DNA of 64,000 bases from Octopus sinensis (Eukaryota). The notes under the pieces were generated by a model. The model saw only the letters and a list, made by a program, of their open reading frames with translations. It ran no database searches and had not been told where the DNA came from. The stretch's first letter is position 1. Each line of letters opens with the position of its first letter. The stretch is from the NCBI RefSeq assembly GCF_006345805.1, contig NC_043022.1, positions 17,174,001-17,238,000 on the forward strand, read 5' to 3'. A program made the position numbers and the translations under genes. Shown here in pieces: positions 27,686-54,746 of this stretch.

Positions 27686-27731
<46 letters not shown>

Positions 27732-28897: not shown

Positions 28898-28929
28898 GCA
28901 TGCTATGGCTGGCCTTGGCCCCCAAAAAG

Positions 28930-30680: not shown

Positions 30681-31124
30681 AAAAGTCACCTCTCTTCACT
30701 TTCTCGCTTACGCTGAGAAACCCTGCAAACTGGCAGCTCCCTGCGGATTTTCCTCCTGCTCGGAATTCACCTGTTATCTCCACAGGTAATGTACCTCACG
30801 CGAGCGGAACAGTAACGGACTACGTGCTGCCATACGGGTGGTTGTGGGGGACAATCCCCGAGAATGAGAGACTGAAATAAACAACCATTGAATTGCAGAA
30901 GCATCTTCTTTCGAGTTCCAGATCCTAAGACTACAGAAATAATTGTAATAGGAGAAGGAGATACTCCGCAGGTACCACGAACCTTCTAGTCCCATTATAG
31001 CCCGTACTTGTAAGGTACCTTCTTGTTATATCTTACGTATTTCGGAAATAACGGCTTAGGTACACCGTCCCAGCAGTGTGTACCCTGTAGAAATATGATT
31101 GTTTTCATCTGATATAAAATGTAT

Positions 31125-31409
31125 TTGTCATGAACAATAATATTCTTTCCGACAATATTTTTTTGTTCTGTACATCGGCTGAGCATGAAATCTATCGAAA
31201 CTAATGTATAGTATTAGTTGTAAATACCCGAAGTAAAGAAATATCAATTACCAAGTGTTTAGTCACACACACACACACATAAGTACATAGAAAAGTGGAG
31301 AGAGAGAGAAAGAGAAAACTAAGAGAGGACGAATCACAAAACCCGGAAATAAGACGCGACGTTCATTTCTCGAGAATTCCTATTCAGGACATTACATTAT
31401 TTGCCAAAA
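31125..31409 (+). promoter_or_regulatory. Proximal upstream block shared by CARD genes 1 and 2 (ETS-like CCGGAAAT, palindrome TTCTCGAGAA, acceptor-like ttcctattcag)
   Basis: Near-identical to 37580-37852. Motif functions are inferred. Confidence 0.5.
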
Positions 31410-32849
31410 ATGAATGTTTACGAGAAATTTCGGCCACAAATTATCCGGAATCTCACTCAAATCGATGATGTTCTGGATTATTTACAGTCTGGTGAACATA
31501 TCACAGAGAGCAATTATGAAAGTATAAGATCAGAAAAGAAAGAAAGCGACAAAATTCGAGAAATGTTGAACATTTTAACAAAAAGAAGTTGTCCTCCTCA
31601 AACGTTCGTGAAGATTCTTTCCGAAACAGGAAACGAATTTTTAGAGAAACTATTCCAAGAACACTTGAACATGAAAATTGAAAGAAAAGTTGTTGAAGAA
31701 AAACCAAAGCCACCAGCAAGAGACAAACGGAGAGTATTTATTATGAAAGGTATGGACGCAGACGACAAATTACATGAATGTTTTTCAAGAAAAAATCCAG
31801 ACTGGGAAGTATCAAATCATTTAGGTTCTATAAACAAATTAAAGGAGGTAATTGGTTCCGTACCAGAGAATAAGTTCAGTTATTTTGATATTATTGTTTC
31901 ATGCGATGAAGATCGTAACCATATTACTAATGAAAGTCTGAAAACAATTTTGGCTCGTATTGAAAAAGAACTCTTACCGGAGTTTCCACCAAGCATCATC
32001 ACTTTTTTGATTATTGTTGATGGGTATGATGATAAGGATTATGTTTTTCATTCCGACACAAAACCCGTGAGTTTTAGGGATGCTAAGATTCGCAAACCAG
32101 TCCTTAGAATATTGACAAGAAAGTTCTTGCATGGATTCCTAGAAGCTTTCTTAAAAGGTGAGGAAACGTTCAATATTTTCATTGCTAAAAAATTCGATTT
32201 GGAAAACAATCTTATGAAAAATAATCCATCGGAAGGAAAAACAGATAAAAGGAAAATATTTATTATGCAAGGTCTGGAACAAAACGAAATATTACGTGAA
32301 TGTTTTTCAGGAAGTAATCCAGACTGGGAAGTATCAACTCTTTGTGGCTCTATAACCAAATTAATAAAGGAAATTGCTTCCATACCAGAGAATAAGTTCA
32401 GTTATTTTGATATTATTGTTTTATGCGATGAAGAGGGTAACCATATTACTAATGAAAGTCTGAAAACAATTTTGCCTTGTATTGAAAACGAACTCTTACC
32501 GAAGTTTCCACCAAGCATCATCACTCTTTTGATTATTGTTAATAATAAAGAGACTGAATCTAAGCCTGTGCAAGAATCCCCATCTGTGAATACGGACGAT
32601 CTTCGAGATTCCAGGCCTGTGCAGGAATCCCAATCTGAGAATATGGACGATCTTCGAGATTCCAGGCCTGTGCAGGAATCCCAATCTGAGAATATGAATG
32701 ACTTACCAGAATCCCAATCAGTGACTGGAGTACTCAAAGCAGACTCTTGCGAAAAATTCTTTAATGCTTTCACCGAAAGTAAAGAAATGTTCAATGTTTT
32801 TATTCGAAAAGCTGATACAAGAAAACAGCTAGGATTACAAGTTTATTGA
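31410..32849 (+). CDS. CARD + 2 caspase-like alpha/beta modules (paralogue 1, 479 aa, single coding exon)
   Basis: Intact ORF. The N-terminal ~85 aa match the CARD pattern (R..II.NL..I.DVLDYL.S...IT...YE.I......DK.R.ML.IL.KR....F..IL.ETG). Module starts at 31725 and 32247, with a 3x17-aa linker repeat at 32559-32711. ATG used rather than the TTG in the ORF track. Confidence 0.9.
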   Translation: MNVYEKFRPQIIRNLTQIDDVLDYLQSGEHITESNYESIRSEKKESDKIREMLNILTKRSCPPQTFVKILSETGNEFLEKLFQEHLNMKIERKVVEEKPKPPARDKRRVFIMKGMDADDKLHECFSRKNPDWEVSNHLGSINKLKEVIGSVPENKFSYFDIIVSCDEDRNHITNESLKTILARIEKELLPEFPPSIITFLIIVDGYDDKDYVFHSDTKPVSFRDAKIRKPVLRILTRKFLHGFLEAFLKGEETFNIFIAKKFDLENNLMKNNPSEGKTDKRKIFIMQGLEQNEILRECFSGSNPDWEVSTLCGSITKLIKEIASIPENKFSYFDIIVLCDEEGNHITNESLKTILPCIENELLPKFPPSIITLLIIVNNKETESKPVQESPSVNTDDLRDSRPVQESQSENMDDLRDSRPVQESQSENMNDLPESQSVTGVLKADSCEKFFNAFTESKEMFNVFIRKADTRKQLGLQVY

Positions 32850-36659: not shown

Positions 36660-37576
36660 TGGTGTTTGTTTTGTATTTATAATAAAATATATACAAATTA
36701 TAAAAATGATTAAAAAATATACATATATATACAGTACTGTTTCTACTTTGTGGATTTTCCCCTATCACAGGGGGTTCCGGTACACAGCACCTACGATAGT
36801 CGAGAGATTAGCATATCCTGAAAACCAAGAACTTTGTCTGTGTGTGTGTGTGTATGTATGTGTGTGTATTCTTGTGTGTGTAAAGACGTCTTAATGGTTA
36901 GGACGTTGCACTCCACATCACTAGATTAATGTTTTAATACCCTGGATGCTTATGAATTCAAGCAAAACACTTTCTTTCACCTGAACCCCAGTCCACTCGG
37001 CTGCAAAGGGGTAAACCTGTAATGGAATGGCATTCTATTTGCCGGGGGTGGGGGGGATATGTTGGCTTCGTCCACCTGGGCAGCAGGGGGGGTAACATTC
37101 AACAGCTACAACTGTGTGTAGAGGTGCATTGTAACCAGTGGTGTATAACAAAAAAATGTCTGATACCCTGATATATATGTGTGTGTGTGTGTATGAAGGA
37201 GAAAAGAAAATGGAGATAAGGAAGTTAAGAATTGTTTATTATCAACAGCAAACTGGTCATGTTAAAATAAATGGATAAGCCCACATAATATAACATCCAA
37301 AGTTATGTTTTTTCCCTATGATGAAATTACACTCCTGACACGTAAATGTAAATTTGTAATTAGATTATTGAGTATTGATTGAAACGGGTTGTAAGAATCG
37401 AAGATGACCAGTTTGCTTTTTGCTGAACTGCTACGTCACAGTGACCTAAATACACTGATACCAGTTGTCAGGTGGTGGCGGAGGGAAACACACACGCATC
37501 AGCCTGTGGTTATATACACTCGTCAGCCTGAGGCTACATACAGAAGTCACTTGCACAGGGTGTTATTAACATCATC
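36660..37576 (+). repeat. Distal upstream block of CARD gene 2, duplicated at 45158-46496
   Basis: Colinear near-identity with 45158-46496 apart from a SINE in the second copy. Confidence 0.9.
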
Positions 37577-37852
37577 GTATTGTCATGAACAATAATATTC
37601 TTTCCGACAATATTTTTTGTTCTGTACATCGGTTGAGCATGAAATCTGTCGAAACTAATGTATAGTATTAGTTGTAAATACCCGAAGTAAAGAAATATCA
37701 ATTACCAAGTGTTTAGTAACACACACACACATAAATACATAGAAAAGTGGAGAGAGAGAAAACTAAGAGAGGACGAACACAAAACCCGGAAATAAGACGC
37801 GACATTCATTTCTCGAGAATTCCTATTCAGGACATTACATTATTTGCCAAAA

Positions 37853-40800
37853 ATGAATGTTTACGTGAAACTTCGGCCACAAATTATCCGGAATCTCACT
37901 CAAATCGATGATGTTCTGGATTATTTACAGTCTGGTGAACATATCACAGAGAGCAATTATGAAAGTATAAGATCAGAAAAGAAAGACAGCGACAAAATTC
38001 GAGAAATGTTGAACATTTTAACAAAAAGAAGTTGTCCTCCTCAAACGTTCGTGAAGATTCTTTCCGAAACAGGAAACGAATCTTTAAAGAAACTATTCCA
38101 AGAACACTTACCGAAAATGGAAAGAGAAGTTGTTGAAGAAAAACCAATGCCACAAGCAAGAGACAAACGGAGAGTATTTATTCTGGAAGGTATGGACACA
38201 GACGAAAAATTACTTGAATGTTTTTCAAGAAAAAATCCAGACTGGGAAGTATCAAATCATTTAGGTTCTATAAACAAATTAAAGGAGGTAATTGGTTCCG
38301 TACCAGAGAATAAGTTCAGTTATTTTGATATTATTGTTTTATGCGATGAAGACTATAATTATATTACTAATGAAAGTCTGAAAACAATTTTGCCTCGTAT
38401 TGAAAAAGAACTCTTACCGGAGTTTCCACCAAGCATCATCACTTTTTTGATTATTGTTGATGGGAATGATGATAGTGGTTATGTTTTTCATTCCGACACA
38501 AAACCCGTGAGTTTTAGGGATGCTAAGATTCGCAAACCAGTCCTTAGAATATTGAAAATAAAGTTCTTGCATGGATTCCTAGAAGCTTTCTTAAAAAGTG
38601 AGGAAACGTTCAATATTTTCATTGATATAAAATTCCTATGGGAAAAAAGTCTTGGAGATAAGAAACCAGTAGAAGAAACAGGAGACAAAAGGAAAGTTTT
38701 TATTCTGGAAGGTTTGGAACAAGATGAAAAATTACACAAACATTTTGCAGAAAGAAATCCCGACTGGGATGTGTCTTTTATTTTAAACCAAAAGTCGTTA
38801 ATGCAACAAATTACTTCCATAGCTCTGAATGAATTTAGTTATTTTGATATTATTGTTTTATGCGATGAAGAGGGTAACCATATTACTAATGAAAGTCTGG
38901 AAACAATTTTGCCTCGTATTGAAAAAGAACTCTTACCAAAGTTTCCACCAAGCATCATCACTTTTTTGATTATTGTTGATGGGAATGATGATAACGGTTA
39001 TGTTTTTCATTCCGACACAAAACCTGTGAGTTTTGGTGATGCTCAGATTCCCAAACCCGTCTTCAGAATAGTGAAAAAGAATATTTTTGAAGACTACATA
39101 GAAGCTTTCTTCAGACACGATGAAATGTTCAATATCTTCATTGCTAAAAAATTCGATTTGGAAAGCAATTTTATGAAAAATAATCCATCGGAAGGAAAAA
39201 CAGATAAAAGGAAAATATTTATTGTGGAAGGTATGGAACAAGACGAAAAATTACACAAACATTTTGCAGAAAGAAATCCAGACTGGGATGTGTCTTTTAT
39301 TTTAGGCTCTCTAACCAAATTAAAGGAGAAAATTGCTTCCATAGCTCCAAATGAATTCAGTTATTTTGATATTATTGTTTTATGCGATGAAGAGGGTAAC
39401 CATATTACTAATGAAAGTCTGAACACAATTTTGGCTCGTCTTGAAAAAGAACTCTTACCAAAGTTTCCACCAAGCATCATCACTTTTTTGATTATTGTTG
39501 ATGGGAATGATGATAACGGTTATGTTTTTCATTCCGACACAAAACCTGTGAGTTTTGGTGATGTTCAGATTCCCAAACCCGTCTTCAGAATAGTGAAAGA
39601 GAATATTTTTGAAGACTACATAGAAGCTTTCTTCAGACATGATGAAATGTTCAATATCTTCATTGCTAAAAAATTCGATTTGGAAAACAATTTTCTGAAA
39701 AATAATCCATCGGAAGGAAAAACAGATAAAAGGAAAATATTTATTGTGGAAGGTCTAGAACAAGACGAAAAATTACACAAACATTTTGCAGAAAGAAATC
39801 CAGACTGGGATGTGTCTTTTATTTTAGGCTCTCTAACCAAATTAAAGGAGAAAATTGCTTCCATAGCTCCAAATGAATTCAGTTATTTTGATATTATTGT
39901 TTTATGCGATGAAGAGGGTAACCATATTACTAATGAAAGTCTGAAAACAATTTTGGCTCGTCTTGAAAAAGAACTCTTACCAAAGTTTCCACCAAGCATC
40001 ATCACTTTTTTGATTATTGTTGATGGGAATGATGATAACGGTTATGTTTTTCATTCCGACACAAAACCTGTGAGTTTTGGTGATGTTCAGATTCCCAAAC
40101 CCGTCTTCAGAATAGTGAAAAAGAATATTTTTGAAGACTACATAGAAGCTTTCTTCAGACATGATGAAATGTTCAATATCTTCATTGCTAAAAAATTCGA
40201 TTTGGAAAACAATTTTATGAAAAATAATCCATTGGAAGGAAAAACAGATAAAAGGAAAATATTTATTGTGGAAGGTCTGGAACAAGACGAAAAATTACAC
40301 AAACATTTTGCAGAAAGAAATCCAGACTGGGATGTGTCTTTTATTTTAGGCTCTCTAACCAAATTAAAGGAGAAAATTGCTTCCATAGCTCCAAATGAAT
40401 TCAGTTATTTTGATATTATTGTTTTATGCGATGAAGAGGGTAACCATATTACTAATGAAAGTCTGAACACAATTTTGGCTCGTCTTGAAAAAGAACTCTT
40501 ACCAAAGTTTCCACCAAGCATCATCACTTTTTTGATTATTGTTGATGGGAATGATGATAACGGTTATGTTTTTCATTCCGACACAAAACCTGTGAGTTTT
40601 GGTGATGTTCAGATTCCCAAACCCGTCTTCAGAATAGTGAAAGAGAATATTTTTGAAGACTACATAGAAGCTTTCTTCAGACATGATGAAATGTTCAATA
40701 TCTTCATTGCTAAAAAATTCGATTTGGAAAGCAATTTTCTGAAAAATAATCCATCGGAAGGAAAAACAGATAAAAGGAAAATATATATTGTGGAAGGTCT

Positions 40801-43800
40801 AGAACAAGACGAAAAATTACACAAACATTTTGCAGAAAGAAATCCAGACTGGGATGTGTCTTTTATTTTAGGCTCTCTAACCAAATTAAAGGAGAAAATT
40901 GCTTCCATAGCTCCAAATGAATTCAGTTATTTTGATATTATTGTTTTATGCGATGAAGAGGGTAACCATATTACTAATGAAAGTCTGAAAACAATTTTGG
41001 CTCGTATTGAAAAAGAACTCTTACCAAAGTTTCCACCAAGCATCATCACTTTTTTGATTATTGTTGATGGGAATGATGATAACGGTTATGTTTTTCATTC
41101 CAACACAAAACCTGTGAGTTTTGGTGATGCTCAGATTCCCAAACCCGTCTTCAGAATAGTGAAAAAGAATATTTTTGAAGACTACACAGAAGCTTTCTTC
41201 AGACACGATGAAATGTTCAATATCTTCATTGCTAAAAAATTCGATTTGGAAGCAATTTTATGAAAAATAATCCATCGGAAGGAAAAACAGATAAAAGGAA
41301 AATATTTATTGTGGAAGGTCTGGAACAAGACGAAAAATTACACAAACATTTTGCAGAAAGAAATCCAGACTGGGATGTGTCTTTTATTTTAGGCTCTCTA
41401 ACCAAATTAAAGGAGAAAATTGCTTCCATAGCTCCAAATGAATTCAGTTATTTTGATATTATTGTTTTATGCGATGAAGAGGGTAACCATATTACTAATG
41501 AAAGTCTGAAAACAATTTTGGCTCGTATTGAAAAAGAACTCTTACCAAAGTTTCCACCAAGCATCATCACTTTTTTGATTATTGTTGATGGGAATGATGA
41601 TAACGGTTATGTTTTTCATTCCGACACAAAACCTGTGAGTTTTGGTGATGCTCAGATTCCCAAACCCGTCTTCAGAATAGTGAAAAAGAATATTTTTGAA
41701 GACTACATAGAAGCTTTCTTCAGACATGATGAAATGTTCAATATCTTCATTGCTAAAAAATTCGATTTGGAAAACAATTTTATGAAAAATAATCCATCGG
41801 AAGGAAAAACAGATAAAAGGAAAATATTTATTGTGGAAGGTTTGGAACAAGACGAAAAATTACACAAACATTTTGCAGAAAGAAATCCAGACTGGGATGT
41901 GTCTTTTATTTTAGGCTCTCTAACCAAATTAAAGGAGAAAATTGCTTCCATAGCTCCAAATGAATTCAGTTATTTTGATATTATTGTTTTATGCGATGAA
42001 GAGGGTAACCATATTACTAATGAAAGTCTGAAAACAATTTTGGCTCGTCTTGAAAAAGAACTCTTACCAAAGTTTCCACCAAGCATCATCACTTTTTTGA
42101 TTATTGTTGATGGGAATGATGATAGTGGTTATGTTTTTCATTCCGACACAAAACCTGTGAGTTTTGGTGATGTTCAGATTCCCAAACCCGTCTTCAGAAT
42201 AGTGAAAAAGAATATTTTTGATGACTACATAGAAGCTTTCTTCAGACATGATGAAATGTTCAATATCTTCATTGCTAAAAAATTCGATTTGGAAAGCAAT
42301 TTTATGAAAAATAATCCATCGGAAGGAAAAACAGATAAAAGGAAAATATTTATTGTGGAAGGTCTGGAACAAGACGAAAAATTACACAAACATTTTGCAG
42401 AAAGAAATCCAGACTGGGATGTGTCTTTTATTTTAGGCTCTCTAACCAAATTAAAGGAGAAAATTGCTTCCATAGCTCCAAATGAATTCAGTTATTTTGA
42501 TATTATTGTTTTATGCGATGAAGAGGGTAACCATATTACTAATGAAAGTCTGAAAACAATTTTGGCTCGTATTGAAAAAGAACTCTTACCAAAGTTTCCA
42601 CCAAGCATCATCACTTTTTTGATTATTGTTGATGGGAATGATGATAACGGTTATGTTTTTCATTCCGACACAAAACCTGTGAGTTTTGGTGATGCTCAGA
42701 TTCCCAAACCCGTCTTCAGAATAGTGAAAAAGAATATTTTTGAAGACTACACAGAAGCTTTCTTCAGACACGATGAAATGTTCAATATCTTCATTGCTAA
42801 AAAATTCGATTTGGAAAGCAATTTTATGAAAAATAATCCATCGGAAGGAAAAACAGATAAAAGGAAAATATTTATTGTGGAAGGTCTGGAACAAGACGAA
42901 AAATTACACAAACATTTTGCAGAAAGAAATCCAGACTGGCATGTGTCTTTTATTTTAGGCTCTCTAACCAAATTAAAGGAGAAAATTGCTTCCATAGCTC
43001 TAAATGAATTCAGTTATTTTGATATTATTGTTTTATGCGATGATGAGGGTAACCATATTACTAATGAAAGTCTGAAAACAATTTTGGCTCGTCTTGAAAA
43101 AGAACTCTTACCAAAGTTTCCACCAAGCATCATCACTTTTTTGATTATTGTTGATGGGAATGATGATAACGGTTATGCTTTTCATTCCGACACAAAACCT
43201 GTGAGTTTTGGTGATGCTCAGATTCCCAAACCCGTCTTCAGAATAGTGAAAAAGAATATTTTTGAAGACTACATAGAAGCTTTCTTCAGACACGATGAAA
43301 TGTTCAATATCTTCATTGCTAAAAAATTCGATTTGGAAAACAATTTTCTGAAAAATAATCCATCGGAAGGAAAAACAGATAAAAGGAAAATATTTATTGT
43401 GGAAGGTCTGGAACAAGACGAAAAATTACACAAACATTTTGCAGAAAGAAATCCAGACTGGGATGTGTCTTTTATTTTAGGCTCTCTAACCAAATTAAAG
43501 GAGAAAATTGCTTCCATAGCTCCAAATGAATTCAGTTATTTTGATATTATTGTTTTATGCGATGAAGAGGGTAACCATATTACTAATGAAAGTCTGAAAA
43601 CAATTTTGGCTCGTATTGAAAAAGAACTCTTACCAAAGTTTCCACCAAGCATCATCACTTTTTTGATTATTATTGATGGGAATGATGATAACGGTTATGT
43701 TTTTCATTCTGACACAAAACCTGTGAGTTTTGGTGATGCTCAGATTCCCAAACCCGTCTTCAGAATAGTGAAAAAGAATATTTTTGAAGACTACACAGAA

Positions 43801-44376
43801 ACTTTCTTCAGACATGATGAAATGTTCAATATCTTCATTGCTAAAAAATTCGATTTGGAAAGTAATTTTCTGAAAAATAATCCATCGGAAGGAAAAACAG
43901 ATAAAAGGAAAATATTTATTGTGGAAGGTCTGGAACAAAACGAAATATTGCACGAACATTTTTCAAGAGATATTCCAGACTGGGATGTATCATTTATCTT
44001 AAACCAAAAGTCGTTAATGGAACAAATTGCTTCCATACCTATTAATGAATTTAGTTTTTTTGATATTATTGTTGTATGTGATGAAGACTCTAATGAGATT
44101 ACTAATGAAAGTCTGAGAACAATGCTATCCAATTATCCAACAAGCATCATCACATTTTTGATAACTGTTAATGAGATGGATGATAACAAAACTGAATCTC
44201 AGCCTGAGATTAACAATGATACTGAGGCTGTGATTGCATTATTGAAAAGGGAGTTTTTCCCTGAATTCTGGGATTCTTTCATTAAAAGTCTGGAAATGTT
44301 CAATGTTTTCATTCGAAAAGCTGATACAAGAAAACACCTCAGATTACAAGTTCATGGAAGAGAAAAGCTTTCGTGA
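37853..44376 (+). CDS. CARD + 12 caspase-like modules (paralogue 2); ~2174 aa if the 1-bp deletion at ~41250 is repaired, otherwise 1136 aa + 1038 aa split ORFs
   Basis: Module starts at 38165, 38687, 39206, 39728, 40250, 40772, 41293, 41815, 42337, 42859, 43381 and 43903. The period is 522 bp, except 519 bp (38687-39206) and 521 bp across the frameshift (ttggaagc versus ttggaaagc/ttggaaaac in other units). Confidence 0.85.
39206..43902 (+). repeat. Coding tandem array: nine near-identical 522-bp units
   Basis: Directly visible. Units differ at only a few recurrent sites. Confidence 0.97.
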
Positions 44377-45157
44377 ATCTTGGATTTTTAACTGATAAAT
44401 TAACATTTTATTATATACTAAAAGCTAATTAACACGGGCTAAAATTAAAAATGGCGCAAATTGTTTTAAATATTCTGGAATCAGAGACAATAATATATTG
44501 TTGTTTTATGGAAAGTAAGGAGACATAAGGTTTATATGAGATTGAATCTGACTAAAATATATCTTAGTAGCATAAATATTTTTCATTATTACCTTTCTGA
44601 AGTTCTTTTGCCTAACTTTTTCTGTGATGGACATATCTGCATTAATTCCTTTTATTCTGACTTTCTCACTGGCAGCCACACGGATGTAGCAAACAATTAT
44701 ACAGAATGGACATTTACAAACAAATTTTGCACTCACAACTAAAGAATCTTGAGTATTTCTTAAATATTGTAATGATTAACACTTTTATATTCTTAATAAA
44801 TGGCCATCTCAGTAATTAATTAATATTGTTCTTCATTCATTCCTTCAAAGCATTCCATTGCATCTTGCTAAGTGTATATGATAGATCGTTAGCCACTACA
44901 CACATTTTTTTCTCTCCTTGTTTCTCTCCTGAAAATTCCCTGGCTTTGGGTAAAAGAAAATATAGAAGGACCAGTTAATTATGATTTTATTGAACATATT
45001 CCCCTTTCAGATTCACACACTTATTGCAGCGGCCCTTCCATTTTTCTAAGCCCTGTAAAAGACCTCGGACGGTTGGGCCTCCAACCAGATCCTTCGTGAT
45101 ACACTAATCCCTCGCCGTGTCGCGGTTTATTCTTTAAGCTTACATCGATTCCTCCAT

Positions 45158-45735
45158 GGTGTTTGTTTTGTATTTATAATAAAATATATACAAATTATAA
45201 AAATGATTAAAAAATATACATAGGAGTGGCTGTGTGGTAAGTAGCTTGCTAACCAACCACATGGTTCCGGGTTCAGTCCCACTGCATGGCATCTTGGGCA
45301 AGTGTCTTCTGCTATAGCCCCAGGCCGACCAATGGATTTGGTAGACGGAAACTGAAAGAAGCCTGTCGTATATATGTATATATATATATATATATGTATG
45401 TGTGTTTGTGTGTCTGTGTTTGTCTCCCTAGCATTGCTTGACATCCGATGCTGGTGCGTTTATGTCCCCGTTACTTAGCGGTTCGGCAAAAAGAGACCGA
45501 TAGAATAAGTACTGGGCTTACAAAAGAATAAGTCCCGGTGTCGAGTTGCTCGATTGAAGGCGGTGCTCCAGCATGGCCGCAGTCAAATGACTGAAACAAG
45601 TAAAAGAGAGTAAAAAAGAGTATATATACAGTACTGTTTCTACTTTGTGGATTTTCCCCTATCACAGGGGGTTCCGGAACACAGCACCTACGATAGTCGA
45701 GGGATTAGCATATCCTGAAAACCAGGAACTTCCTC

Positions 45736-45769
<34 letters not shown>

Positions 45770-46496
45770 TGTGTGTGTATGTGTGTGTATTTTTGTGTGT
45801 GTAAAGACGTCTTAATGGTTAGGACGTTGCACTCCACATCACTAGATTAATGTTTTAATACCCTGGATGCTTATGAATTCAAGCAAAACACTTTCTTTCA
45901 CCTGAACCCCAGTCCACTCGGCTGCAAAGGGGTAAACCTGTAATGGAATGGCATTCTATTTGCCGGGAGTGGGGGGGATATGTTGGCTTCGTCCACCTGG
46001 GCAGCAGGGGGGTAACATTCAACAGCTACAACTGTGTGTAGAGGTGCATTGTAACCAGTGGTGTATAACAACAAAATGTCTGATACCCTGATATATATGT
46101 GTGTGTGTGTGTGTGTATGTATAAAGGAGAAAAGAAAATGGAGATAAGGAAGTTAAGAATTGTTTATTATCAACAGCAAACTGGTCATGTCAAAATAAAT
46201 GGATAAGCCCACATAATATAACATCCAAAGTTATGTTTTTTTCCTCTGATGAAATTACACTCCTGACACGTAAATGTAAATTTGTAATTAGATTATTGAG
46301 TATTGATTGAAACGGGTTGTAAGAATCGAAGATGACCAGTTTGCTTTTTGCTGAACTGCTACATCACAGTGACCTAAATACACTGATACCAGTTGTCAGG
46401 TGGTGGCGGAGGGAAACACACACGCATCAGCCTGTGGTTATATACACTGGTCAGCCCGAGGCTACATACAGAAGTCACTTGCACAGGGTGTTATTA
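45158..46496 (+). repeat. Orphan duplicate of the gene-2 distal upstream block with a SINE inserted at 45221-45620
   Basis: Matches 36660-37576 at an offset of ~8.5 kb. It ends where a (CAT)n SINE tail meets the catcatcg site and is not followed by the proximal block or a CARD ORF. Confidence 0.85.
45221..45620 (+). mobile_element. tRNA-derived SINE inserted after the segmental duplication
   Basis: Absent from the orthologous aaaaaatatacatatatatacagtac site at ~36715-36735. Confidence 0.85.
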
Positions 46497-46860
46497 TCAT
46501 CATCATCATCATCATCGTTTAACGTCCGCTTTCCATGCTAGCATGGGTTGGATGATTTGACTGAGGACTGGCGAACCAGATGGATGCACCAGGCTCCAAT
46601 CTTGAACTGGCAGAATTTCTACAGCTGGAAGCCCTTCCTAACGCCAACCACTCTGAGAGTGTAGTGGGTGCTTTTACGTGTCACTGGCAATGACAGCGCT
46701 CGAATCTTTTACAGATGCCACCAGCACAGGTGCCAGTAAGGCGACACAGGTAACAATCACGCTCGGATGGTGTCTTTTACATGCCACTGGCTCAGAGGCC
46801 AGTTAGCCGCTTTGGCAACGATCATGCTCGGATGGTGCTCTTAACACCCTACTAGCACGG
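46495..46860 (-). mobile_element. (GAT)n-tailed SINE
   Basis: catcatcgtttaacgtccgctttccatgctagcatgggttgg... Confidence 0.8.
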
Positions 46861-46879
46861 GGCTTGAGAGCCTTGTGAG

Positions 46880-47400
46880 GAATGGAATGTTTGAGCATAA
46901 GTACTGATAAGGTTAACAGGCCCATCAGAAGTGTGCAATTGAAATGGGAATATCCACTATGAACCGTCACTGTTGAGTTCTACCAACTTTAGCAGAGTTC
47001 TTCATGGCAAAGCCAACATCATGCTCCCTTGCCAGATAAAGCTATAGTCTCTTTCACGAAGGGTTCCCAAATCTGGAACCCACATTTCCTGGAGTGCTGC
47101 AATGTCCACTCGGAGTCATAAGCAGTCTGTTGTTGATCATTGCTGTCTTGCATGTGTCACTGATCTTTTGAAAGTCCTTACCTTCCAACATCCAGGCCAG
47201 ACTGAATGCTGGCTTTTTGTGTTGCTTGCTTGCCTGTTTCTTTGTTTTTCTTGGTGCAATGTTTGCAGCTCACAAATCGGGATCGTAGTTTCCCTAAGGT
47301 CCACGCACCCGATGGAGCTGGTGGGCTGTGATGGGAGAATACCTAAACTGGCTGTGAGCTGCCCAGCTTGAGGCAAGTGGTAGCTGTCCAGTGAGGCACA
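46880..47400 (-). mobile_element. RTE LINE 5' fragment, degenerate
   Basis: Minus-strand DYSFIWQG..HDVGFAMKN...LISTYAQT endonuclease-like motifs with stops. Confidence 0.55.
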
Positions 47401-49242
47401 ATGGCCTCTCCCTCCATCAAAAGTAGCCCCCCCATGCCTTGCTCTTACACCAATTATGTGCAGGCTTAAACCCGTAGAATAATATGGTTAGACAGCGCTG
47501 GAGTGTTCTCTCCAGAGTGCAGGCCTGGGCAGTTTTTCGTGGGAGATCAGCAGTTGCCCCAACCTCTTCTCTGCCACCAGTGTTATCCAAGCGAAGGGCA
47601 GGGGCCAATACAACTTGGCATCAGCGAGGCCACAGGAATGGCCAGAGGGAGGTCTACAGCATTGAACTGCCTTAGAAATTCCGGCTCCTGATTTATCCTC
47701 AGGGTTTACTCCTGAAGCCTTTCCCTTAAGTGGGTATTGCCTCAAGGCAGTGGGGCTGTTATTTATCGCTGCTGTTTTAAGAGGGTAAGGGTTCAATAAG
47801 CAGCATAACTAATTACAAGAGTGGCTTATTTGGGTGGCTGAGTTCACCTGCACTTTCACAGGTCTTGTATTTAACCCTTCAGGGTGACCAAATAGCCAGA
47901 AAAGCACCCTCTTCACAAAGCAAATTCTGTGGGGTTCCCAGCTTAGTCACTGATGTCCCAACATCTGGCATCTGTGGAGAAAGAAAAGAAAGAAGGTAGT
48001 AGAGGAAAGAGGAATCAGAAACAAGAATACAGATACCTGTAAAAAGAAAACAAGAATACACAGTGGTAGTTCTAAGCAGACTACAGTTTGGCCTGTTACT
48101 ATGGAAACAGGCACCAATGTGTCTATGGCTTTTGATTGGCTAAATTTTGCACCTTATAAAAGCTATTAACTTATTAGTCATTAATTTATGGCAAAAATGA
48201 ATTTTATGTTCCAAATTAGCATACAAAACTACACCAATTTTGAAAACAATTGGAACAAAATTTTAAAACAAAAAGAGAAATAGCAACGTTACATGACGTA
48301 GTTGGTGGGTATTGTTTTTTTTAAAATCGTAATTAGAGCACCTGTGCATCGTAATAAGGTGATAAATATGTTTACTGTATGTATACCATAGATACATTGG
48401 ACATTCTGTTTATGAATGCATATAATAAACATATTTGGTATCACTGACAATTTCAGCCCATTTTACGATGCATTAGTGCTCTAATTATAAATGAAAAACA
48501 TCAATAACTCCAACAACACCATTTAATGTCCTTTCCTTCCTGAGATTATGGAATAGTTTAAAGAGGATTTGGCTGCTATTTCTAGCAGATTGAGAGACCA
48601 CATAATAGGTTTCATCTCGTCTTTGCTAGTTTCCATGAGAACCGACAGTTCTCATCGATGTCTTAAATTGTTTGGGAGATAAATAAGTCGACTTATTGTT
48701 AAACAACGGAGTCCTTGGTTGTAGCCACCAAAAAGGGAACGAAAGTCTTTTTTCTTTTATTATTATTTTTGGTCCAGAATTCCTCGATATGAATTCGTGT
48801 AAATATGACAAGAATTAATGGTACTTTTTGGTTATATCACCCCCATTAAAAAATTGGCATATGTCCCTACTAAAAATCAAGTTAATGTAGTGATAGATTG
48901 GATCAAAAGAGACCTTTTTGACTCAATACATCAACACGTTTTTGACGTTTGGCATCCTCAATAGGCATTCGAGGATTTCTTGTAAAAAATATTATCAGAC
49001 TCAGTAAGATGTTTAATTTTTTTTGGTTTCCATATTTATTTATTTTTTCTGTTTTCATGTTTATTACTGTTTTTTTTTCAGTTTTGTATGATTTGTTATA
49101 AAAATATCAGATTCAAAACGATGTTTCATCGTTTCACTTTTTACGTTTATTAATTTTTTTCACTTTTTTTTTTGTTCTATTGAGGGTTAAGCAATATTTT
49201 TAGTTGAAGGAGACAACCACAAAAAGTACCGATATTTCTTTT

Positions 49243-49674
49243 GGCGATCTTTCGTCTCTAGTAGACCTTTCCGTCGATTTCCGTAAAAAAAATTTTTTTT
49301 TACATATGGGCTTGCGGGAACTTTTGAAGTAATATACATACATATACACATACACCGAGTAAAAAATTTCAGTTATCTCTTCCTTTCACACATTACTCTG
49401 TCTCTTCACACACACTAACAGAAGCACTTCACTTACACAACATACTGTCTGTCTCCCACACCCCATCAAACACACACACACACGCACGCACACACACATG
49501 TCCATCAATGCTCCCATGCACGGTAACTTCAAAAGAACTTCCCTCGTCATACAATCGCTTTCTCTTAGTTTCTTTCGCTCTCATTACTTCAAAAGTTCCC
49601 GCAAGCCCATATGTAAAAAATAAAAAAATTTTACGGAAATCGACGGAAAGGTCTACTAGAGACGAAAGATTGCC
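49243..49674. mobile_element. MITE-like element with ~90-bp inverted arms
   Basis: ggcgatctttcgtctctagtagacctttccgtcgatttccgtaaaa...gggcttgcgggaacttttgaagtaat pairs with attacttcaaaagttcccgcaagccc...gtctactagagacgaaagattgcc. Confidence 0.8.
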
Positions 49675-50499
49675 TAATTTGACATTCCAAATTGACTCTG
49701 TAATTTTCTTTCCACCCGCATTCACATATTCGCATTTTGCGCAGGGACGTCCTTATTCGCGGTTTCTACAAAGTTCTCCTGATGCACAATCACTTCGTGA
49801 GTGTACATGCTGTTATTTAGTTGTTAATCCCCCTTCAATTTTTATTTACTTGTTTAAACATCCGAAACTGAAAGATTACCGGATAAAATTACGTAACTTT
49901 AAATTGTAATTTCTTTATTATTAACTGAGATTAGGCCTCGAAACCGGTTTTATATTATGATCAGTAAAACCGAAACCGATTTGCCAAAATCGATTTTAAG
50001 GCTTGCTATTTCGGATATTTTCAATAAAAGATGTTTTATGTAACACATTCTACCAGTATACGAAGTTTAAAAGTGTTTAGTTACAAATAACTATTTTTTA
50101 AATATGCCGGTCAAAGTGAAAAGATCCGCTGCTTCTTTTTTTTTTTTTTTTTTTCGCAAAACATTTCTCCATTTTTTCTTTTCAATAAATATCCTTGAAA
50201 CTGAACTAACTGAACTGTTGTCGGTCGCCTTTAGTTGAGAGTGCTGTCTGTTTCATTGAAACATATCGCAACATATCAATTCTCACCATCTTTCCCCTTG
50301 AACCTTAGATCAGCACCTTGTCATCTCCTTCGCTAACCCCTGGCTGACTCTTTGAATTTGCTGGTAACTGAGTTTATTAATAGCAAGTCAAGGGATGCTG
50401 TTAGTCTTCAGTCGGGTGATCATTCCCGTTGAGCATATGTAATAACCAGTTCCAGAGTCATTTCAAGGAAGTAACACTAAATTTTTTGATCGCTATAAC

Positions 50500-51300
50500 A
50501 GACGATAGTGATCGCCATAACAGACGATAGTGATGATGAAGCTGATATAAGCCAACAAGACATACTTTGTCAAACAGATTTGGCTCACGAAAATGCTTGT
50601 TTACCCCAGCTAAAACCTGAATTTAACAGAGTTTTAAATAAGGTAAGAAAAATTTCAAAACTTTACCGTAAATCTACAAAAAATGAAATTTTGCAAGATT
50701 TTGTACGAGCGAACTTTGATAACAGAGAATATAAACTTATACTGGATTGCAGAACTCGGTGGAATGGCACATTCCATATGATTGAGAGATATTTGAAATT
50801 GAAAAGCTGCATTCCAAAAGATCTACGTGCAGAACTTTCCAAGATGCCGTCGCTGACGAAGAATGGAAATCTCTCAATTTACTATATGAAATTCTGCATT
50901 CAGTAGAAATTATTTTGAAGGCTATTTGCGCTGACGATACGGGTTTACTGAAAGCAGAATATTCTATAGAATTTTTATTGAATAAACTTAATATCATCGG
51001 CAACCCTTTGGCTCTAAATCTTCGTGAAAGACTTATGCATAGATATAATAAGAGAAGAAATGTCGAAACCTTGATTTTCTTGAGGTATTTAGATAACCCA
51101 AGGAAATTTAAAGGTGAGTCAATTTCTGGACATTTTCTATTTTTTAACGAAACAACATTTAAGGGAGTATGCTGAACAAACATATAGGAGATTATTTCCT
51201 GAACATGATGCTGAGAACACAACAGAATTATACAAAGAAAATGAAATAAGGGAACCTAGAAACAAATGTTACTGTTGTCCCATCTTCTTATGAAGGTAAT
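50500..51300 (+). pseudogene. hAT (Ac/Hermes-like) transposase remnant
   Basis: KVRKISKLYRKS...LILDCRTRWNGTFHMIERYL motif, broken by frameshifts. Confidence 0.8.
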
Positions 51301-51376
51301 GGACTCATTCGTGAATACACAAGCACAATGAAGAGCCCGAGATGGTAACAGATGGATTTGAAATTTCTAAAGAATT

Positions 51377-51548
51377 CGGGTACTATTTAAGAAGAGTGAT
51401 CCCGGTGCGCGCACTCGCGCTAGCTAGTCGTGACTAGTCGATCCTACAACGACTACCTAGCAAAGTAAATAAAACACAAAGGATCGACTAGTCACGACTA
51501 GCTAGCGCGAGTGCGCGCACCGGGGCCACTCTTCTTAAGTAGTACCCG
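51377..51548. mobile_element. CpG-rich MITE, short member of the 30175 family in opposite orientation
   Basis: ~68-bp TIRs (gggtacta...gatcct) with 3 mismatches. The internal caaagtaaataaaac is the reverse complement of gttttatttactttg in the 30.2 kb copy. Confidence 0.85.
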
Positions 51549-51929
51549 CGAAAACCGGTTTTGAGAATTACTTATTCTTGAACTCGGTTTTGGGAATTAT
51601 CGGTCTCAAAGCAACGAAAATATTTTGACAAATTAAATTTAAATGTTGAGGCTTATAAACACCTTCCACGCTGCAATTGTTTTCGTTCCAGCACACGATC
51701 TCAGATCAGGTCACTTGATATGCAAGTACATCTCCGTAAATCTTTATTATTAATTTCTACAAAAAAAAAAAAAAAAAAATGATGCGATTTTCGCCATCAG
51801 CAAAACTACATTAGAACCATATTCTTTGAAAATGACCTGGTACAATTTGAAAAACTTGAAGTCATTGGAAGAAATTTTACGCGATTCTGAGGTAGGTACT
51901 CGGAAATCATAGGAGAGGGTAAGATAAAA

Positions 51930-52070
51930 TTGATCTCCAATTACCCGGGGCTGGGCATGGATGGGCGGGCGGGGGGTAATTGGAAATCAATTTCGATTCC
52001 CCACCCCTTCACCCCTGAGAAATGTTAAGCGAGGTCACCTGAATGGAAATCTCCCTCGCTATCCTCCGGG
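51930..52070. promoter_or_regulatory. GC-rich island upstream of gene 3: 17-bp inverted repeat around a G-quadruplex-type tract with GC boxes, and a kappaB-like site
   Basis: ttgatctccaattaccc pairs with gggtaattggaaatcaa around GGGG-ct-GGG-catggat-GGG-c-GGG-c-GGGGGG. GGAAATCTCCC at 52045-52055. Function is inferred. Confidence 0.35.
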
Positions 52071-52127
52071 GTAATGCCTTTCCCATTTTCTCTGTTGGTG
52101 CCAAGAGAAATGTTAAAATATGATAGA

Positions 52128-52658
52128 AAGCTGTATACAGCTATGGTACGACCACACTTGGAATTCGCATCATCAGTTTGGAACCCCTATCTTGCTCAGA
52201 ACATTGACCTCCTGGAATCTGTCCAGAGACGTGCAACCAAACGCATACCCTCCATCAGACACCTACCATATTCTGAGCGCCTTGTTTCCCTGGGCATGGA
52301 TTCACTGAAGCTCCGGCGTCTGGCGACGGACTTGGTAAACACCCACAAAGTTATCAACCACCTCACCAACAACAACACTGAACACCTTTTTGATCTCCAT
52401 GTGTCTAACACACGTGGACATGCCTACAAAGTCAGAAAACAATACAGCTCCCATGACTTTCGGAAACATTTTTTCACGCTCAGAGTTGCTGAAGCATGGA
52501 ATAAACTGCCTGCGTCAGTTGTTGACTGCCATGACACTGCATCCTTTAAGGCCCTCATGCTTTCCGAAATCCGCCGAAACTACACCTGGTTATATATACA
52601 CTTTAGATGAGTTGTAGTGCACCTGAGCACTGTACACAATTATTATTATTATTATTAT
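52128..52658 (+). mobile_element. CR1 LINE 3' end (young copy), ~260 bp upstream of the gene 3 ATG
   Basis: Near-identical to the 28.3 kb copy, with an (ATT)n tail. Confidence 0.9.
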
Positions 52659-52919: not shown

Positions 52920-54746
52920 ATGGAGGTTTACGTGAGACTTCGGCCACAAATTATCCAGAATCTCACTCAAATCGATGATGTTCTGGATTATTTACAGTCT
53001 GATGGTCATATCACAACTAGAAATTACGAAACTATAAAATCACAAAATACAGAAAGCAACAGCATTCGGAAAATGTTGGAGATTTTACAAAAAAGAAATT
53101 GTTTACCTGAAACGTTCATCAAGATTCTTTCCGAAACAGGAAACGAATCTTTAAAGAAACAATTCCAAGAATACTTTACGAAAATGGGAAGAGAAGTTGA
53201 CCAAGAAAAACCAAAGCCACAAGCAAGAGACAAAAGGAAAATATTTATTCTGGAAGGTATGGACACAGACGAAAAATTACGTGAATGTTTTTCAAGAAGT
53301 AATCCAAACTGGGAAGTGTCTTTTATTTTTGGTTCTATAACCAAATTAAAGGAGGAAATTGCTTCCTTACCAGAGAATAAGTTCAGTTATTTTGATATAA
53401 TTGTTGTATGTGATGAAGACTATAAATATATTACTAATAAAAGTCTGAAAACAATTTTGCCTCGTATTGAAAAAGAACTCTTACCAAAGTTTCCACCGAG
53501 CATCAGCACTTTTTTGATTATTGTTGATGTGAATGATGATAATGGTTATGTTTTTCATTCCGACACAAAACCTGTGAGTTTTGGTGATGCTCAGATTCGC
53601 AAACCAGTCTTTAGAATATTGAAAACAAAGTTCTTGCATGGATTCCTAGAAGCTTTCTTTAAAAGTGAGGAAACGTTCAATATTTTCATTGATAAAAAAT
53701 TCCTATCGGAAAAAAGTCTTGTAGATAATAAACCAGTAGAAGAAACAACAGACAAAAGGAAAATATTTATTGTGGAAGGTCTGGAACAAGACGAAAAATT
53801 ACACAAACATTTTGCAGAAAGAAATCCAGACTGGGATGTGTCTTTTCTTTTAAACCAAAAGTCGTTAATGCAACAAATTACTTCCATAGCTCTGAATGAA
53901 TTTAGTTATTTTGATATTATTGTTCTATGTGATGAAGAGGGTAACCATATTACTAATGAAAGTCTGAAAACAATTTTGGCTCGTATTGAAAAAGAACTCT
54001 TACCAAAGTTTCCACCAAGCATCATCGCATTTTTGATAATTGTTGATGGGAATGATGATAACGGTTATGTTATTCATTCCGACACAAAACCTGTGAGTTT
54101 TGGTGATGCTCAGATCCCCAAACCCGTCTTCAGAATAGTGAAAAAGAATATTTTTGAAGACTACATAGAAACTTTCTTCAGACACGAGGAAATGTTCAAT
54201 ATCTTCATTGCTAAAAAATTCGATTTGGAAAACAATTTTATGAAAAATAATCCATCGGAAGGAAAAACAGATAAAAGGAAAATATTTATTGTGGAAGGTA
54301 TGGAACAAAACGAAAAATTGCACGAACATTTTTCAAGAGATATTCCAGACTGGGATGTGTCTTTTATTTTTAGCCATGAGTCGTTAATGGAACAAATTGC
54401 TTCCATACCTCTGAATGAATTTAGTTTTTTTGATATTATTGTTGTATGTGATGAAGACTCTAATGAGATTACTAATGAAAGTCTGAGAACAATGCTATCC
54501 AAATATCCAACAAGCATCATCACATTTTTGATAACTGTTAATGAGATGGATGATAACAAAACTGAATCTCAGCCTGAGATTAACAATGATACTGAGGGTG
54601 TGATTGCATTATTGAAAAGGGAGTTTTTCCCTGAATTCTGGGATTCTTTCATTAAAAGTAAGGAAATGTTCAATGTTTTCATTCGAAAAGCTGATACAAG
54701 AAAACACCTAAGAATACAAGTTCATGGAAGAGAAAAACTTTTGTGA
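52920..54746 (+). CDS. CARD + 3 caspase-like modules (paralogue 3, 608 aa, single coding exon)
   Basis: Intact ORF from MEVYVRLRPQ. Module starts at 53232, 53754 and 54273 (522 and 519 bp spacing, as in the first units of gene 2). The 3' flank is homologous to that of gene 2. Confidence 0.9.
   Translation: MEVYVRLRPQIIQNLTQIDDVLDYLQSDGHITTRNYETIKSQNTESNSIRKMLEILQKRNCLPETFIKILSETGNESLKKQFQEYFTKMGREVDQEKPKPQARDKRKIFILEGMDTDEKLRECFSRSNPNWEVSFIFGSITKLKEEIASLPENKFSYFDIIVVCDEDYKYITNKSLKTILPRIEKELLPKFPPSISTFLIIVDVNDDNGYVFHSDTKPVSFGDAQIRKPVFRILKTKFLHGFLEAFFKSEETFNIFIDKKFLSEKSLVDNKPVEETTDKRKIFIVEGLEQDEKLHKHFAERNPDWDVSFLLNQKSLMQQITSIALNEFSYFDIIVLCDEEGNHITNESLKTILARIEKELLPKFPPSIIAFLIIVDGNDDNGYVIHSDTKPVSFGDAQIPKPVFRIVKKNIFEDYIETFFRHEEMFNIFIAKKFDLENNFMKNNPSEGKTDKRKIFIVEGMEQNEKLHEHFSRDIPDWDVSFIFSHESLMEQIASIPLNEFSFFDIIVVCDEDSNEITNESLRTMLSKYPTSIITFLITVNEMDDNKTESQPEINNDTEGVIALLKREFFPEFWDSFIKSKEMFNVFIRKADTRKHLRIQVHGREKLL

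What the first reader, a model, noticed from the sequence alone, without database searches (positions are those of the whole stretch)
39206..43902. Gene 2 equals gene 3 plus exactly nine 522-bp units: a recent in-frame array expansion
The repaired gene-2 CDS (6525 bp) minus 9x522 gives 1827 bp, the exact length of the gene-3 CDS, and the first unit spacings match (522 then 519 bp). The nine units are almost identical, so the expansion is young and probably copy-number polymorphic. This is a coding VNTR of whole folded domains.
Basis: seen in the sequence. Interest (0 to 1): 0.75.

Follow-up and report, generated by a model that had tools for sequence, protein, structure and literature searches.

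The report
Octopus CARD gene with tandem-domain array

Summary
They lie inside an intronless + strand gene (g2, 37853-44376). With the block removed, g2 is 1827 bp and aligns codon for codon with g3 (52920-54746) at 93.3% identity.

The window is Octopus sinensis. Three paralogous genes (g1, g2, g3) each encode an N-terminal CARD plus 2, 12 or 3 copies of a 174-aa alpha/beta domain. That domain matches no Pfam, NCBIfam or PDB sequence and was found only in Octopoda.

- The nine units are a distinct mosaic subtype: B-type with a roughly 40-bp A-type patch.
- They differ by 0.4-2.3%, as much as O. sinensis differs from O. vulgaris in the flanks (0.6-1.5%).
- O. vulgaris has the same subtype in an intact 1821-aa ORF with seven copies, including one clearly orthologous unit.

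So the array predates the species split and turns over by unequal crossing-over and gene conversion. The O. sinensis copy is split by a 1-bp deletion in an A-run (41250-41251), which could be an assembly error or a real null allele. Function is inferred only: a CARD-recruited multivalent scaffold, with a weak caspase-like fold resemblance.

The parts
37853..44376 (+). Gene g2 (RefSeq LOC118768007 by inference). It is intronless and encodes a CARD plus 12 units (A, B, R1-R9, T). A 1-bp deletion splits it into ORFs 37844-41263 and 41260-44376.
   Evidence: ORF list and translations; first ATG and length; the intact 1821-aa O. vulgaris orthologue P0011 is a single ORF.
37853..38110 (+). CARD (caspase recruitment domain) of g2.
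   Evidence: Pfam PF00619 scores 37-38 bits against a cut-off of 23.9 for the paralogous g3 and g1 proteins. tblastn of the g3 CARD maps to 37853-38152 at 70% identity.
38162..38683 (+). Unit A of g2 (522 bp).
   Evidence: It is 99.2% identical to O. vulgaris unit A.
38684..39202 (+). Unit B of g2 (519 bp; carries the NQKSLMQQITSIAL segment).
39203..43899 (+). The nine R units. R1 starts at 39203, R2 39725, R3 40247, R4 40769 (521 bp), R5 41290, R6 41812, R7 42334, R8 42856, R9 43378. Each is 522 bp (174 aa), of B type with an A-type patch at unit nt ~103-140.
41250..41251 (+). Frameshift site. The A-run is one base shorter than in all other units, which leads to a premature TGA at 41261-41263.
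43900..44376 (+). Terminal unit T of g2 (477 bp, shortened domain, includes the stop codon).
   Evidence: It is 96.0% identical to g3 T and 98.5% to O. vulgaris gene 2 T.
52920..54746 (+). Gene g3 (LOC118768009): CARD plus units A (53229), B (53751, 519 bp) and T (54270). 1827 bp, 608 aa.
   Evidence: The O. vulgaris orthologue P0002 is 92% identical.
31410..32849 (+). Gene g1 (LOC118768008): CARD plus unit A (31722) and a terminal unit (32244) that contains a 51-bp x2.6 coding minisatellite at 32564-32696.
36701..37576 (+). Upstream copy of a ~900-bp direct repeat that flanks g2. Its partner is at 45601-46504 (93.6% identity).
   Evidence: The same element lies upstream of three gene copies in O. 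vulgaris.
45601..46504 (+). Downstream copy of the ~900-bp direct repeat that flanks g2.

Best explanation
The feature is a genuine coding macrosatellite. It consists of nine tandem 522-bp units, each encoding one whole 174-aa alpha/beta domain plus linker. It sits inside a single-exon CARD-domain gene that belongs to a small tandem gene cluster restricted to Octopoda.

How it arose (shown by comparison):
1. After g2 and g3 separated, a B-type unit received a short (~40-bp) gene-conversion patch from an A-type unit. That created the founder 'R' unit.
2. R was amplified by unequal crossing-over before O. sinensis and O. vulgaris split.
3. Since then the array has kept turning over through unit gain and loss, two-unit block duplication, B/R hybrid formation and conversion from g3. 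It now has nine R units in O. sinensis and seven in O. vulgaris.

The 1-bp deletion in the window is either a residual assembly error or a recent null allele.

How it most likely works (inferred, not shown): the CARD recruits the protein into homotypic death-fold assemblies of innate-immune or cell-death signalling. The C-terminal string of like domains then acts as a multivalent platform whose valency is set by copy number. The domain lacks any recognisable catalytic signature, so binding or scaffolding is more likely than enzymatic activity.
For: Array and arithmetic.

Units are distinct real copies:
- There are 25 variable columns. Among those tabulated (first 468 nt of the unit) all are substitutions and 7 of 21 variants are shared by two or more units; the one indel is the R4 deletion.
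- The longest exact repeat is 458 bp.

Independent assembly of a sister species: O. vulgaris OX597839.1 carries an intact 5466-bp ORF of 1821 aa, with units A + U2-U8 (R type) + U9 (B type) + T.

Age:
- The R6/U8 pair is 99.0% identical and shares four derived sites.
- Flank divergence is 0.63-1.49%, against 0.4-2.3% between R units.

Turnover:
- O. vulgaris U3-U7 form a species-specific clade, with U4=U6 and U5=U7 and a 1155-bp exact repeat at offset 1044.
- U2 is a hybrid with a B 5' end and an R 3' end.
- U9 shares a 15-bp deletion with O. vulgaris g3 unit B.

Mosaic origin of R.

One unit is one domain: AF2 gives pLDDT 73 and pTM 0.74, with a b-a-b-a-b-a-b, hairpin, b, a-a layout and low-confidence termini. 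The same secondary-structure pattern occurs three times in full-length g3.

CARD: Pfam PF00619 scores above its cut-off. The nearest solved CARDs are MDA5 CARD2 and NLRP1.

Rapid evolution typical of immune-type genes:
- pN/pS is 0.79 among R units and 0.6-2.2 between paralogous units.
- The CARDs of g2 and g3 differ at 24 nonsynonymous against 2 synonymous codons.
- Gene number differs between the species, 3 against 5.
Against: - No reads were available, so the exact copy number in the O. sinensis individual and the reality of the frameshift are unverified.
- As assembled, g2 cannot make a 12-domain protein.
- pN/pS near 0.8 among R units is compatible with relaxed constraint on the array.
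- No expression or protein data were found. The RefSeq isoforms of the neighbours look like repeat-induced models.
- The functional part rests only on the CARD and on analogy. The repeated domain has no significant sequence or structure match.
Confidence: 0.7

Rival explanations
1. Assembly artefact. The nine units result from over-expansion, or from concatenation of haplotypes, of a much shorter array in the long-read assembly.
For: Tandem arrays with 98-99% unit identity are hard to assemble and polish. The single 1-bp homopolymer deletion shows that at least one base in the array may be wrong. No reads could be examined.
Against: - All nine units have different sequences. They differ by substitutions, several of them shared between units in a tree-like pattern, not by the indel noise expected of errors.
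- The longest exact repeat is only 458 bp, so ordinary long reads span and resolve the 4.7-kb block.
- An independent assembly of the sister species has a comparable array of seven R units in an open 1821-aa frame.
- 1-bp indels between the two assemblies are rare in the flanks: about 7 in 20.7 kb, 2 of them deletions in the window.
Confidence: 0.07
2. The array is a very recent, species-specific expansion of a g3-like gene (g3 plus nine fresh copies).
For: The length equality is exact. R units are more alike (97.7-99.6%) than g2 and g3 units are to each other (92-96%). The closest pairs, R1/R3 at 99.6% and R4/R7 and R5/R7 at 99.4%, are probably recent.
Against: - The R subtype and the array are shared with O. 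vulgaris, with an orthologous unit pair.
- The deepest R-R divergence (2.3%) exceeds the interspecies flank divergence.
- R is a mosaic not present in g3.
Confidence: 0.08
3. Decaying gene. g2 is a pseudogene in O. sinensis, the frameshift is real, and the array is drifting neutrally like a satellite with no function for its copy number.
For: The frameshift truncates the protein after CARD + A + B + R1-R4. pN/pS among R units is 0.79, with 16 nonsynonymous against 5 synonymous variants. RefSeq annotates only the downstream 1038-aa ORF.
Against: - The 3.1 kb downstream of the frameshift has no further stop or indel.
- The O. vulgaris orthologue is fully open over 5466 bp.
- R6 against U8 shows pN/pS of 0.16.
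- With only about 25 substitutions, the absence of nonsense changes is weak evidence either way.
Confidence: 0.25
4. The repeated unit is a degenerate caspase (p20-like) domain. The family would then be a CARD-pseudocaspase lineage derived from a CARD-caspase by duplication, acting as decoys or regulators of caspase activation.
For: - Caspases are the most frequent named class among the top Foldseek hits in two libraries. In the PDB these are procaspase-7 (E 2.5e-3, prob 0.99), caspase-3, -6, -1 and drICE, with TMq up to 0.52.
- In the viral library they are the ascovirus executioner caspase and the giant-virus and entomopoxvirus caspase-like proteins.
- The architecture of a CARD followed by an alpha/beta domain mimics initiator caspases.
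- In Argonauta hians the family member lies 10 kb upstream of a gene with a CARD-like first exon and a Peptidase_C14 domain.
Against: - No hit reaches E <= 1e-3. TM-scores are 0.3-0.5, and flavodoxins and TIR domains score similarly.
- Pfam Peptidase_C14 is not detected even at E <= 10.
- No conserved His/Cys dyad follows strands 3 and 4.
- No caspase was found within the 64-kb window or the 58-kb O. vulgaris region.
Confidence: 0.2

Closest known systems
Human LPA kringle IV type 2 repeat (coding copy-number-variable macrosatellite; from general knowledge)
   Same: It is a tandem array of near-identical units, each encoding one whole folded domain. Units are gained and lost by unequal recombination, and domain number is the variable trait.
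   Different: LPA units are about 5.5 kb with introns and are proven polymorphic within a species. Here the units are 522 bp inside one exon, the domain is an orphan alpha/beta fold, and only between-species variation (9 vs 7) has been shown.
Bacterial 'periscope' surface proteins and Rib/alpha-C, SasG/Aap repeats (DNA-identical tandem domain repeats of variable number; from general knowledge)
   Same: Whole-domain repeats are kept nearly identical at the DNA level inside a single ORF. Number varies between close relatives, and units evolve in concert.
   Different: Those are secreted or wall-anchored stalks in bacteria. This is an animal gene with a cytosolic-type N-terminal CARD and no signal peptide evident from the sequence.
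CARD-containing adaptors and sensors (ASC, BCL10, RAIDD, MDA5/RIG-I 2CARD, NLRP1/CARD8)
   Same: The N-terminal CARD passes the Pfam threshold. The nearest solved CARDs are MDA5 CARD2 and NLRP1. Like many invertebrate immune genes, the family evolves rapidly, is lineage-specific and is tandemly duplicated.
   Different: None of the known partner domains is present (helicase, NACHT, FIIND, PYD, death domain, caspase). The C-terminal domain is unclassified and repeated up to 12 times.
Pseudocaspases / initiator caspases (cFLIP, caspase-2/-9, CED-3, Dronc)
   Same: A death-fold domain is followed by an alpha/beta domain whose best, though weak, structural matches are caspases. In Argonauta the neighbouring gene is a CARD-caspase.
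   Different: There is no Peptidase_C14 sequence signal, no His/Cys dyad and no p10-like part that could be recognised. The domain has 174 aa rather than about 250, and it is tandemly iterated.
PRDM9 / KRAB zinc-finger arrays and NBPF Olduvai arrays (coding minisatellites evolving by concerted evolution; from general knowledge)
   Same: Units form species-specific clades next to a few orthologous units. Higher-order (two-unit) duplications occur, and nonsynonymous variation between units is high.
   Different: The unit size and fold differ, and no DNA-binding or neuronal role is implied.

Membership tests
CARD (Pfam PF00619, death-fold superfamily) | Sequence match to the CARD profile above the curated threshold | tested here: met
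   g3 scores 37.4 bits and g1 38.3 bits against a cut-off of 23.9. Homologues P0008, P0009 and P0012 score 33-40 bits.
CARD (Pfam PF00619, death-fold superfamily) | Six-helix bundle structure | tested here: inconclusive
   The full-length AF2 model predicts helices across residues 2-94, but pLDDT is below 50-60 there.
Caspase / Peptidase_C14 | Sequence match to the Peptidase_C14 profile | tested here: not met
   No Pfam hit for any of 12 units even at E <= 10. The profile search against PDB sequences found no caspase.
Caspase / Peptidase_C14 | Catalytic His after strand 3 and Cys after strand 4 | tested here: not met
   The residues that follow the predicted strands are Cys70-Asp71 and Asp109-Gly110. 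No His is conserved across unit types, and the invariant residues are R12, D65, I67, C70, L82, L105, V108, D113, F152 and F159.
Caspase / Peptidase_C14 | Caspase-hemoglobinase fold | tested here: inconclusive
   The best Foldseek hits are caspases, but at E >= 2.5e-3 and TMq 0.34-0.52. Flavodoxin and TIR structures score alike.
TIR domain | Sequence or fold match to TIR | tested here: not met
   There is no Pfam hit. Foldseek hits to TIR-STING and SPARTA have E 1.3e-2 or worse and TMq <= 0.33.
Coding macrosatellite / VNTR of whole domains | Head-to-tail units of constant length divisible by three, in one reading frame | tested here: met
   There are nine units of 522 bp, with R4 at 521 bp because of one deleted A.
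Coding macrosatellite / VNTR of whole domains | One unit encodes one autonomous folded domain | tested here: met
   The AF2 model of one unit is a compact alpha/beta domain spanning residues 12-176, with disordered ends.
Coding macrosatellite / VNTR of whole domains | Copy number varies among individuals of a species | not testable with these tools
   Only one assembly per species was available. Between species the count is nine against seven R units.
Concerted evolution by unequal crossing-over / gene conversion | Species-specific unit clades, hybrid units and higher-order duplications alongside residual orthologous units | tested here: met
   The NJ tree and variant table show the U3-U7 clade, U4=U6 and U5=U7, U2 as a B/R hybrid, U9 sharing the g3 15-bp deletion, and the R6/U8 orthologous pair.

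The most novel reading that the evidence does not exclude
The 174-aa unit is a previously undescribed, Octopoda-specific derivative of the caspase fold that has lost the catalytic dyad. The CARD-(unit)n genes would then be a family of tunable-valency pseudocaspase decoys or platforms for octopus death-fold signalling. Domain number (1 to 12) and gene number (3 to 5) would be kept variable by recombination under host-pathogen selection.
Probability: 0.15. Interest if true: 0.7.

Novelty: new member of a known kind. Interest (0 to 1): 0.45.

Why it matters
Arrays in which whole folded domains behave as a recombining macrosatellite are rare in animals, and where known (LPA, PRDM9) they have strong phenotypic effects. 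Here the array sits in a CARD protein of a lineage-restricted, fast-evolving gene cluster, in an animal group whose innate immunity is poorly understood.

If the gene is expressed, domain number would give a natural allelic series for testing how valency affects death-fold signalling. The orphan domain would also be a new building block attached to a CARD.

There is a practical point too. The locus is mis-modelled in RefSeq, with a truncated 1038-aa product and isoforms that 'splice' between repeat units. It should be re-annotated as single-exon genes.

Tried and rejected
- TRF could not see the array because its period limit is 500. The repeat finder was used instead.
- Sequence searches for the repeated domain gave nothing beyond chance: Pfam at E <= 10, NCBIfam and a PDB sequence profile.
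- The exhaustive HMMER scan of 1.84 billion representatives gave five hits. Four were octopod proteins and one was a spurious EF-hand repeat protein of Aureococcus.
- The two word-indexed searches, with the unit profile and with the Argonauta protein, added only P0012 and nothing else.
- The full-length g3 AF2 model was too poor (pLDDT 54) for fold search.
- A caspase gene was sought near the octopus cluster using the Argonauta neighbour's first exon. None was found in the window or in 58 kb of O. vulgaris. ORFs in the flanks gave only transposon remnants.
- Literature searches for the locus names, and for cephalopod CARD proteins, found no description of this family.
- Homopolymer-indel statistics between the two assemblies were too sparse to decide whether the frameshift is an error.
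- The fourth flank alignment (27714-31409) was misaligned (19% differences) and was discarded.
Full report
**What is there**

The window is a piece of an Octopus sinensis chromosome-scale contig of 25.5 Mb. The proteins it encodes are listed under that species, and its own ORF is recognised as window-encoded.

Between 31 and 55 kb the + strand carries three intronless paralogous genes:
- g1, 31410-32849, 479 aa
- g2, 37853-44376, 6524 bp
- g3, 52920-54746, 1827 bp, 608 aa

tblastn finds exactly three CARD copies and 17 repeat units (2 + 12 + 3) in the 64 kb. Each protein starts with a CARD; Pfam PF00619 scores 37-38 bits against a cut-off of 23.9. The rest consists of 174-aa units that match no Pfam or NCBIfam family.

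**Checking the observation**

A conserved codon motif, together with the unit table, marks unit starts as follows:
- g2: 38162, 38684, 39203, 39725, 40247, 40769, 41290, 41812, 42334, 42856, 43378, 43900
- g3: 53229, 53751, 54270

g2 then has nine further units (39203-43899) before a shortened terminal unit. Eight of the nine are 522 bp. R4 is 521 bp because an A-run at 41250-41251 is one base shorter than in every other unit, which gives a TGA at 41261-41263.

The arithmetic is correct: 6524 + 1 - 9x522 = 1827. Joining the two flanks of the block gives 1827 bp that align to g3 with no indel, at 93.3% nt and 86.7% aa identity.

**The units are real, distinct copies**

R1-R9 are 97.7-99.6% identical, with 25 variable columns. 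Of the 21 variants tabulated in the first 468 nt, all are substitutions and seven are shared by two or more units; the array's only indel is the R4 deletion. No two units are identical, and the longest exact repeat is 458 bp. This is not the pattern of an assembler duplicating a unit, and a 4.7-kb block is within reach of ordinary long reads.

**What the R unit is**

A sliding comparison shows that R is a B-type unit, 96-100% identical to B over most of its length. The exception is unit nt ~103-140. There B has a 3-bp shorter and quite different segment (NQKSLMQQITSIAL), while R carries an A-type segment (GSLTKLKEKIASIAP) that is closest to g3 unit A at 91%.

So the nine units are not copies of any unit of g3. 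They descend from a mosaic founder made by a short conversion tract.

**Comparison with the sister species**

The O. vulgaris assembly (GCA_951406725.2, OX597839.1) has the orthologous cluster. Its gene 2 (P0011, CAI9741433.1) is an uninterrupted 5466-bp ORF of 1821 aa. Its unit order is A, seven R-type units (U2-U8, each 522 bp), one B-type unit (U9, 504 bp) and T. That makes 10 domains against 12 in the window.

Orthologous single-copy parts are about 99% identical: A 99.2%, T 98.5%, g3 B 99.0%. Non-coding flanks differ by 0.63-1.49% in substitutions. The 0.4-2.3% divergence among R units is therefore as large as the species divergence.

The variant table and tree show four things:
- R6 and U8 share four derived sites and are 99.0% identical, so they are an orthologous pair.
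- U3-U7 form an O. vulgaris-specific clade with an alternating pattern (U4=U6, U5=U7). This matches a 1155-bp exact repeat at offset 1044, which indicates a recent two-unit duplication.
- U2 has the 5' end of B and the 3' end of R, so it is a hybrid.
- U9 carries the same 15-bp deletion as unit B of O. vulgaris gene 3, which points to conversion from g3.

Together these findings show that the array existed before the species split. They also show that it turns over by unequal crossing-over and gene conversion.

The cluster varies at the gene level as well. O. vulgaris has two extra copies of a roughly 7.8-kb segment (P0006 of 461 aa and P0012 of 286 aa) between the orthologues of g1 and g2.

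**The frameshift**

Downstream of the deletion the frame stays open for 1038 codons, and the O. vulgaris gene is intact. Single-base indels between the two assemblies are rare in the flanks, about 7 in 20.7 kb. The data therefore do not decide between a polishing error in a repeat and a recent null allele. RefSeq appears to annotate only the downstream ORF.

**The domain**

AF2 on an alignment of 12 units, including two from Argonauta, gives a compact alpha/beta domain with pLDDT 73 and pTM 0.74. The elements are strands 12-17, 38-42, 63-70 and 101-108 alternating with helices, then a low-confidence loop, a hairpin, strand 136-141 and two C-terminal helices. The unit ends are disordered. One DNA unit therefore equals one domain plus linker. 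The full-length g3 model is poor (pLDDT 54) but repeats the same secondary-structure pattern three times.

Foldseek finds no match at E <= 1e-3 in the PDB or in BFVD. In both libraries the most frequent named class among the top hits is caspases (procaspase-7 at E 2.5e-3, CASP1 at TMq 0.52, ascovirus caspase), followed by flavodoxins and TIR domains.

Sequence-level tests are negative, and no His/Cys dyad is conserved. I therefore call it a flavodoxin-like or caspase-like alpha/beta domain of unassigned family.

**Distribution**

An exhaustive scan of 1.84 billion representative proteins found only octopod proteins: O. sinensis, O. vulgaris, O. bimaculoides LOC106872585, and an Argonauta hians protein at 27% identity. 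Further searches added nothing outside Octopoda.

In Argonauta the gene is CARD + two units in one exon. It lies 10 kb upstream of a gene with a CARD-like first exon and a Peptidase_C14 domain. This is a lead for a caspase-related origin, not proof.

**Selection**

pN/pS is 0.79 among R units, with 16 nonsynonymous against 5 synonymous variants. It is 0.26-2.2 between paralogous units and 0.16 for R6 against U8. The CARDs of g2 and g3 differ at 24 nonsynonymous against 2 synonymous codons. The family evolves fast, as many immune-related gene clusters do. The counts are too small for formal tests.

**Mechanism**

Shown: the tandem array, the mosaic founder, an age older than the species split, and recombinational turnover.

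Inferred: the CARD recruits the protein into death-fold assemblies, and the chain of like domains provides multivalent binding whose valency is set by copy number. I give about 0.85 to the evolutionary account and about 0.4 to the functional one.

**Novelty**

No paper in the searchable library mentions these loci. The phenomenon, a coding macrosatellite of whole domains evolving in concert, is known from LPA KIV-2, PRDM9 and bacterial periscope proteins (general knowledge). This is a new member of that kind, attached to an undescribed CARD-plus-orphan-domain family.

Noticed in passing
window 32564-32696: A 51-bp x2.6 coding minisatellite (17-aa PVQESQSENMDDLRDSR-like repeats) sits inside the terminal unit of g1. 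RefSeq isoform P0005 lacks exactly one 51-bp copy, and the O. vulgaris paralogues carry two or three copies. This is a second, smaller coding VNTR in the same cluster.
   Followed up: partly
window 31410-54746 vs O. vulgaris L002-L004: Gene-level copy number differs. The window has three CARD genes. O. vulgaris has five, because a roughly 7.8-kb segment (intergenic DNA plus the gene 5' part) is triplicated there, giving P0006 (461 aa) and P0012 (286 aa).
   Followed up: partly
window 36701-37576 and 45601-46504: A ~900-bp direct repeat (93.6% identity) brackets g2. The same element precedes each of three gene copies in O. vulgaris. It may be the substrate or the footprint of the segmental duplications.
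   Followed up: no
window 53646-54164, 53691-54209, 38288-53354: RefSeq isoforms of LOC118768009 (P0003, P0004) skip exactly one 519-bp unit, or join g2 to g3 across 15,067 bp. The junctions lie at homologous positions of the repeats. These are probably repeat-induced alignment artefacts, or transcripts from alleles with fewer units.
   Followed up: partly
window 37853-38107 vs 52920-53174: The CARDs of g2 and g3 differ at 24 nonsynonymous against only 2 synonymous codons. g1 against g2 gives 5 against 0. This hints at diversifying selection on the CARD surface.
   Followed up: partly
window 52074-52610 (+), 28318-28849 (-), 59434-59909: Three copies of a retroelement fragment are present. The ORF resembles the C-terminal part of a LINE reverse transcriptase by eye, with no Pfam hit. 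Two copies are 98.9% identical and inverted, one on either side of g1-g2.
   Followed up: no
window 61271-61831: An ORF with helix-turn-helix matches, including a weak match to the Tc3 transposase HTH. It is a probable Tc1/mariner remnant.
   Followed up: no
window 2566-3449, 3962-4754, 21889-23426: Very long microsatellite blocks: TCTA x226, CCA x269 and TATG x400 with a 120-bp higher-order period.
   Followed up: no
L005:10001-11200 and L005:22113-22319 (Argonauta hians): The only non-Octopus family member (CARD + 2 units, 27% identity) lies 10 kb upstream of a gene annotated with Peptidase_C14. That gene's first exon is CARD-like (Pfam E 1.3e-3 on a 69-aa fragment).
   Followed up: partly
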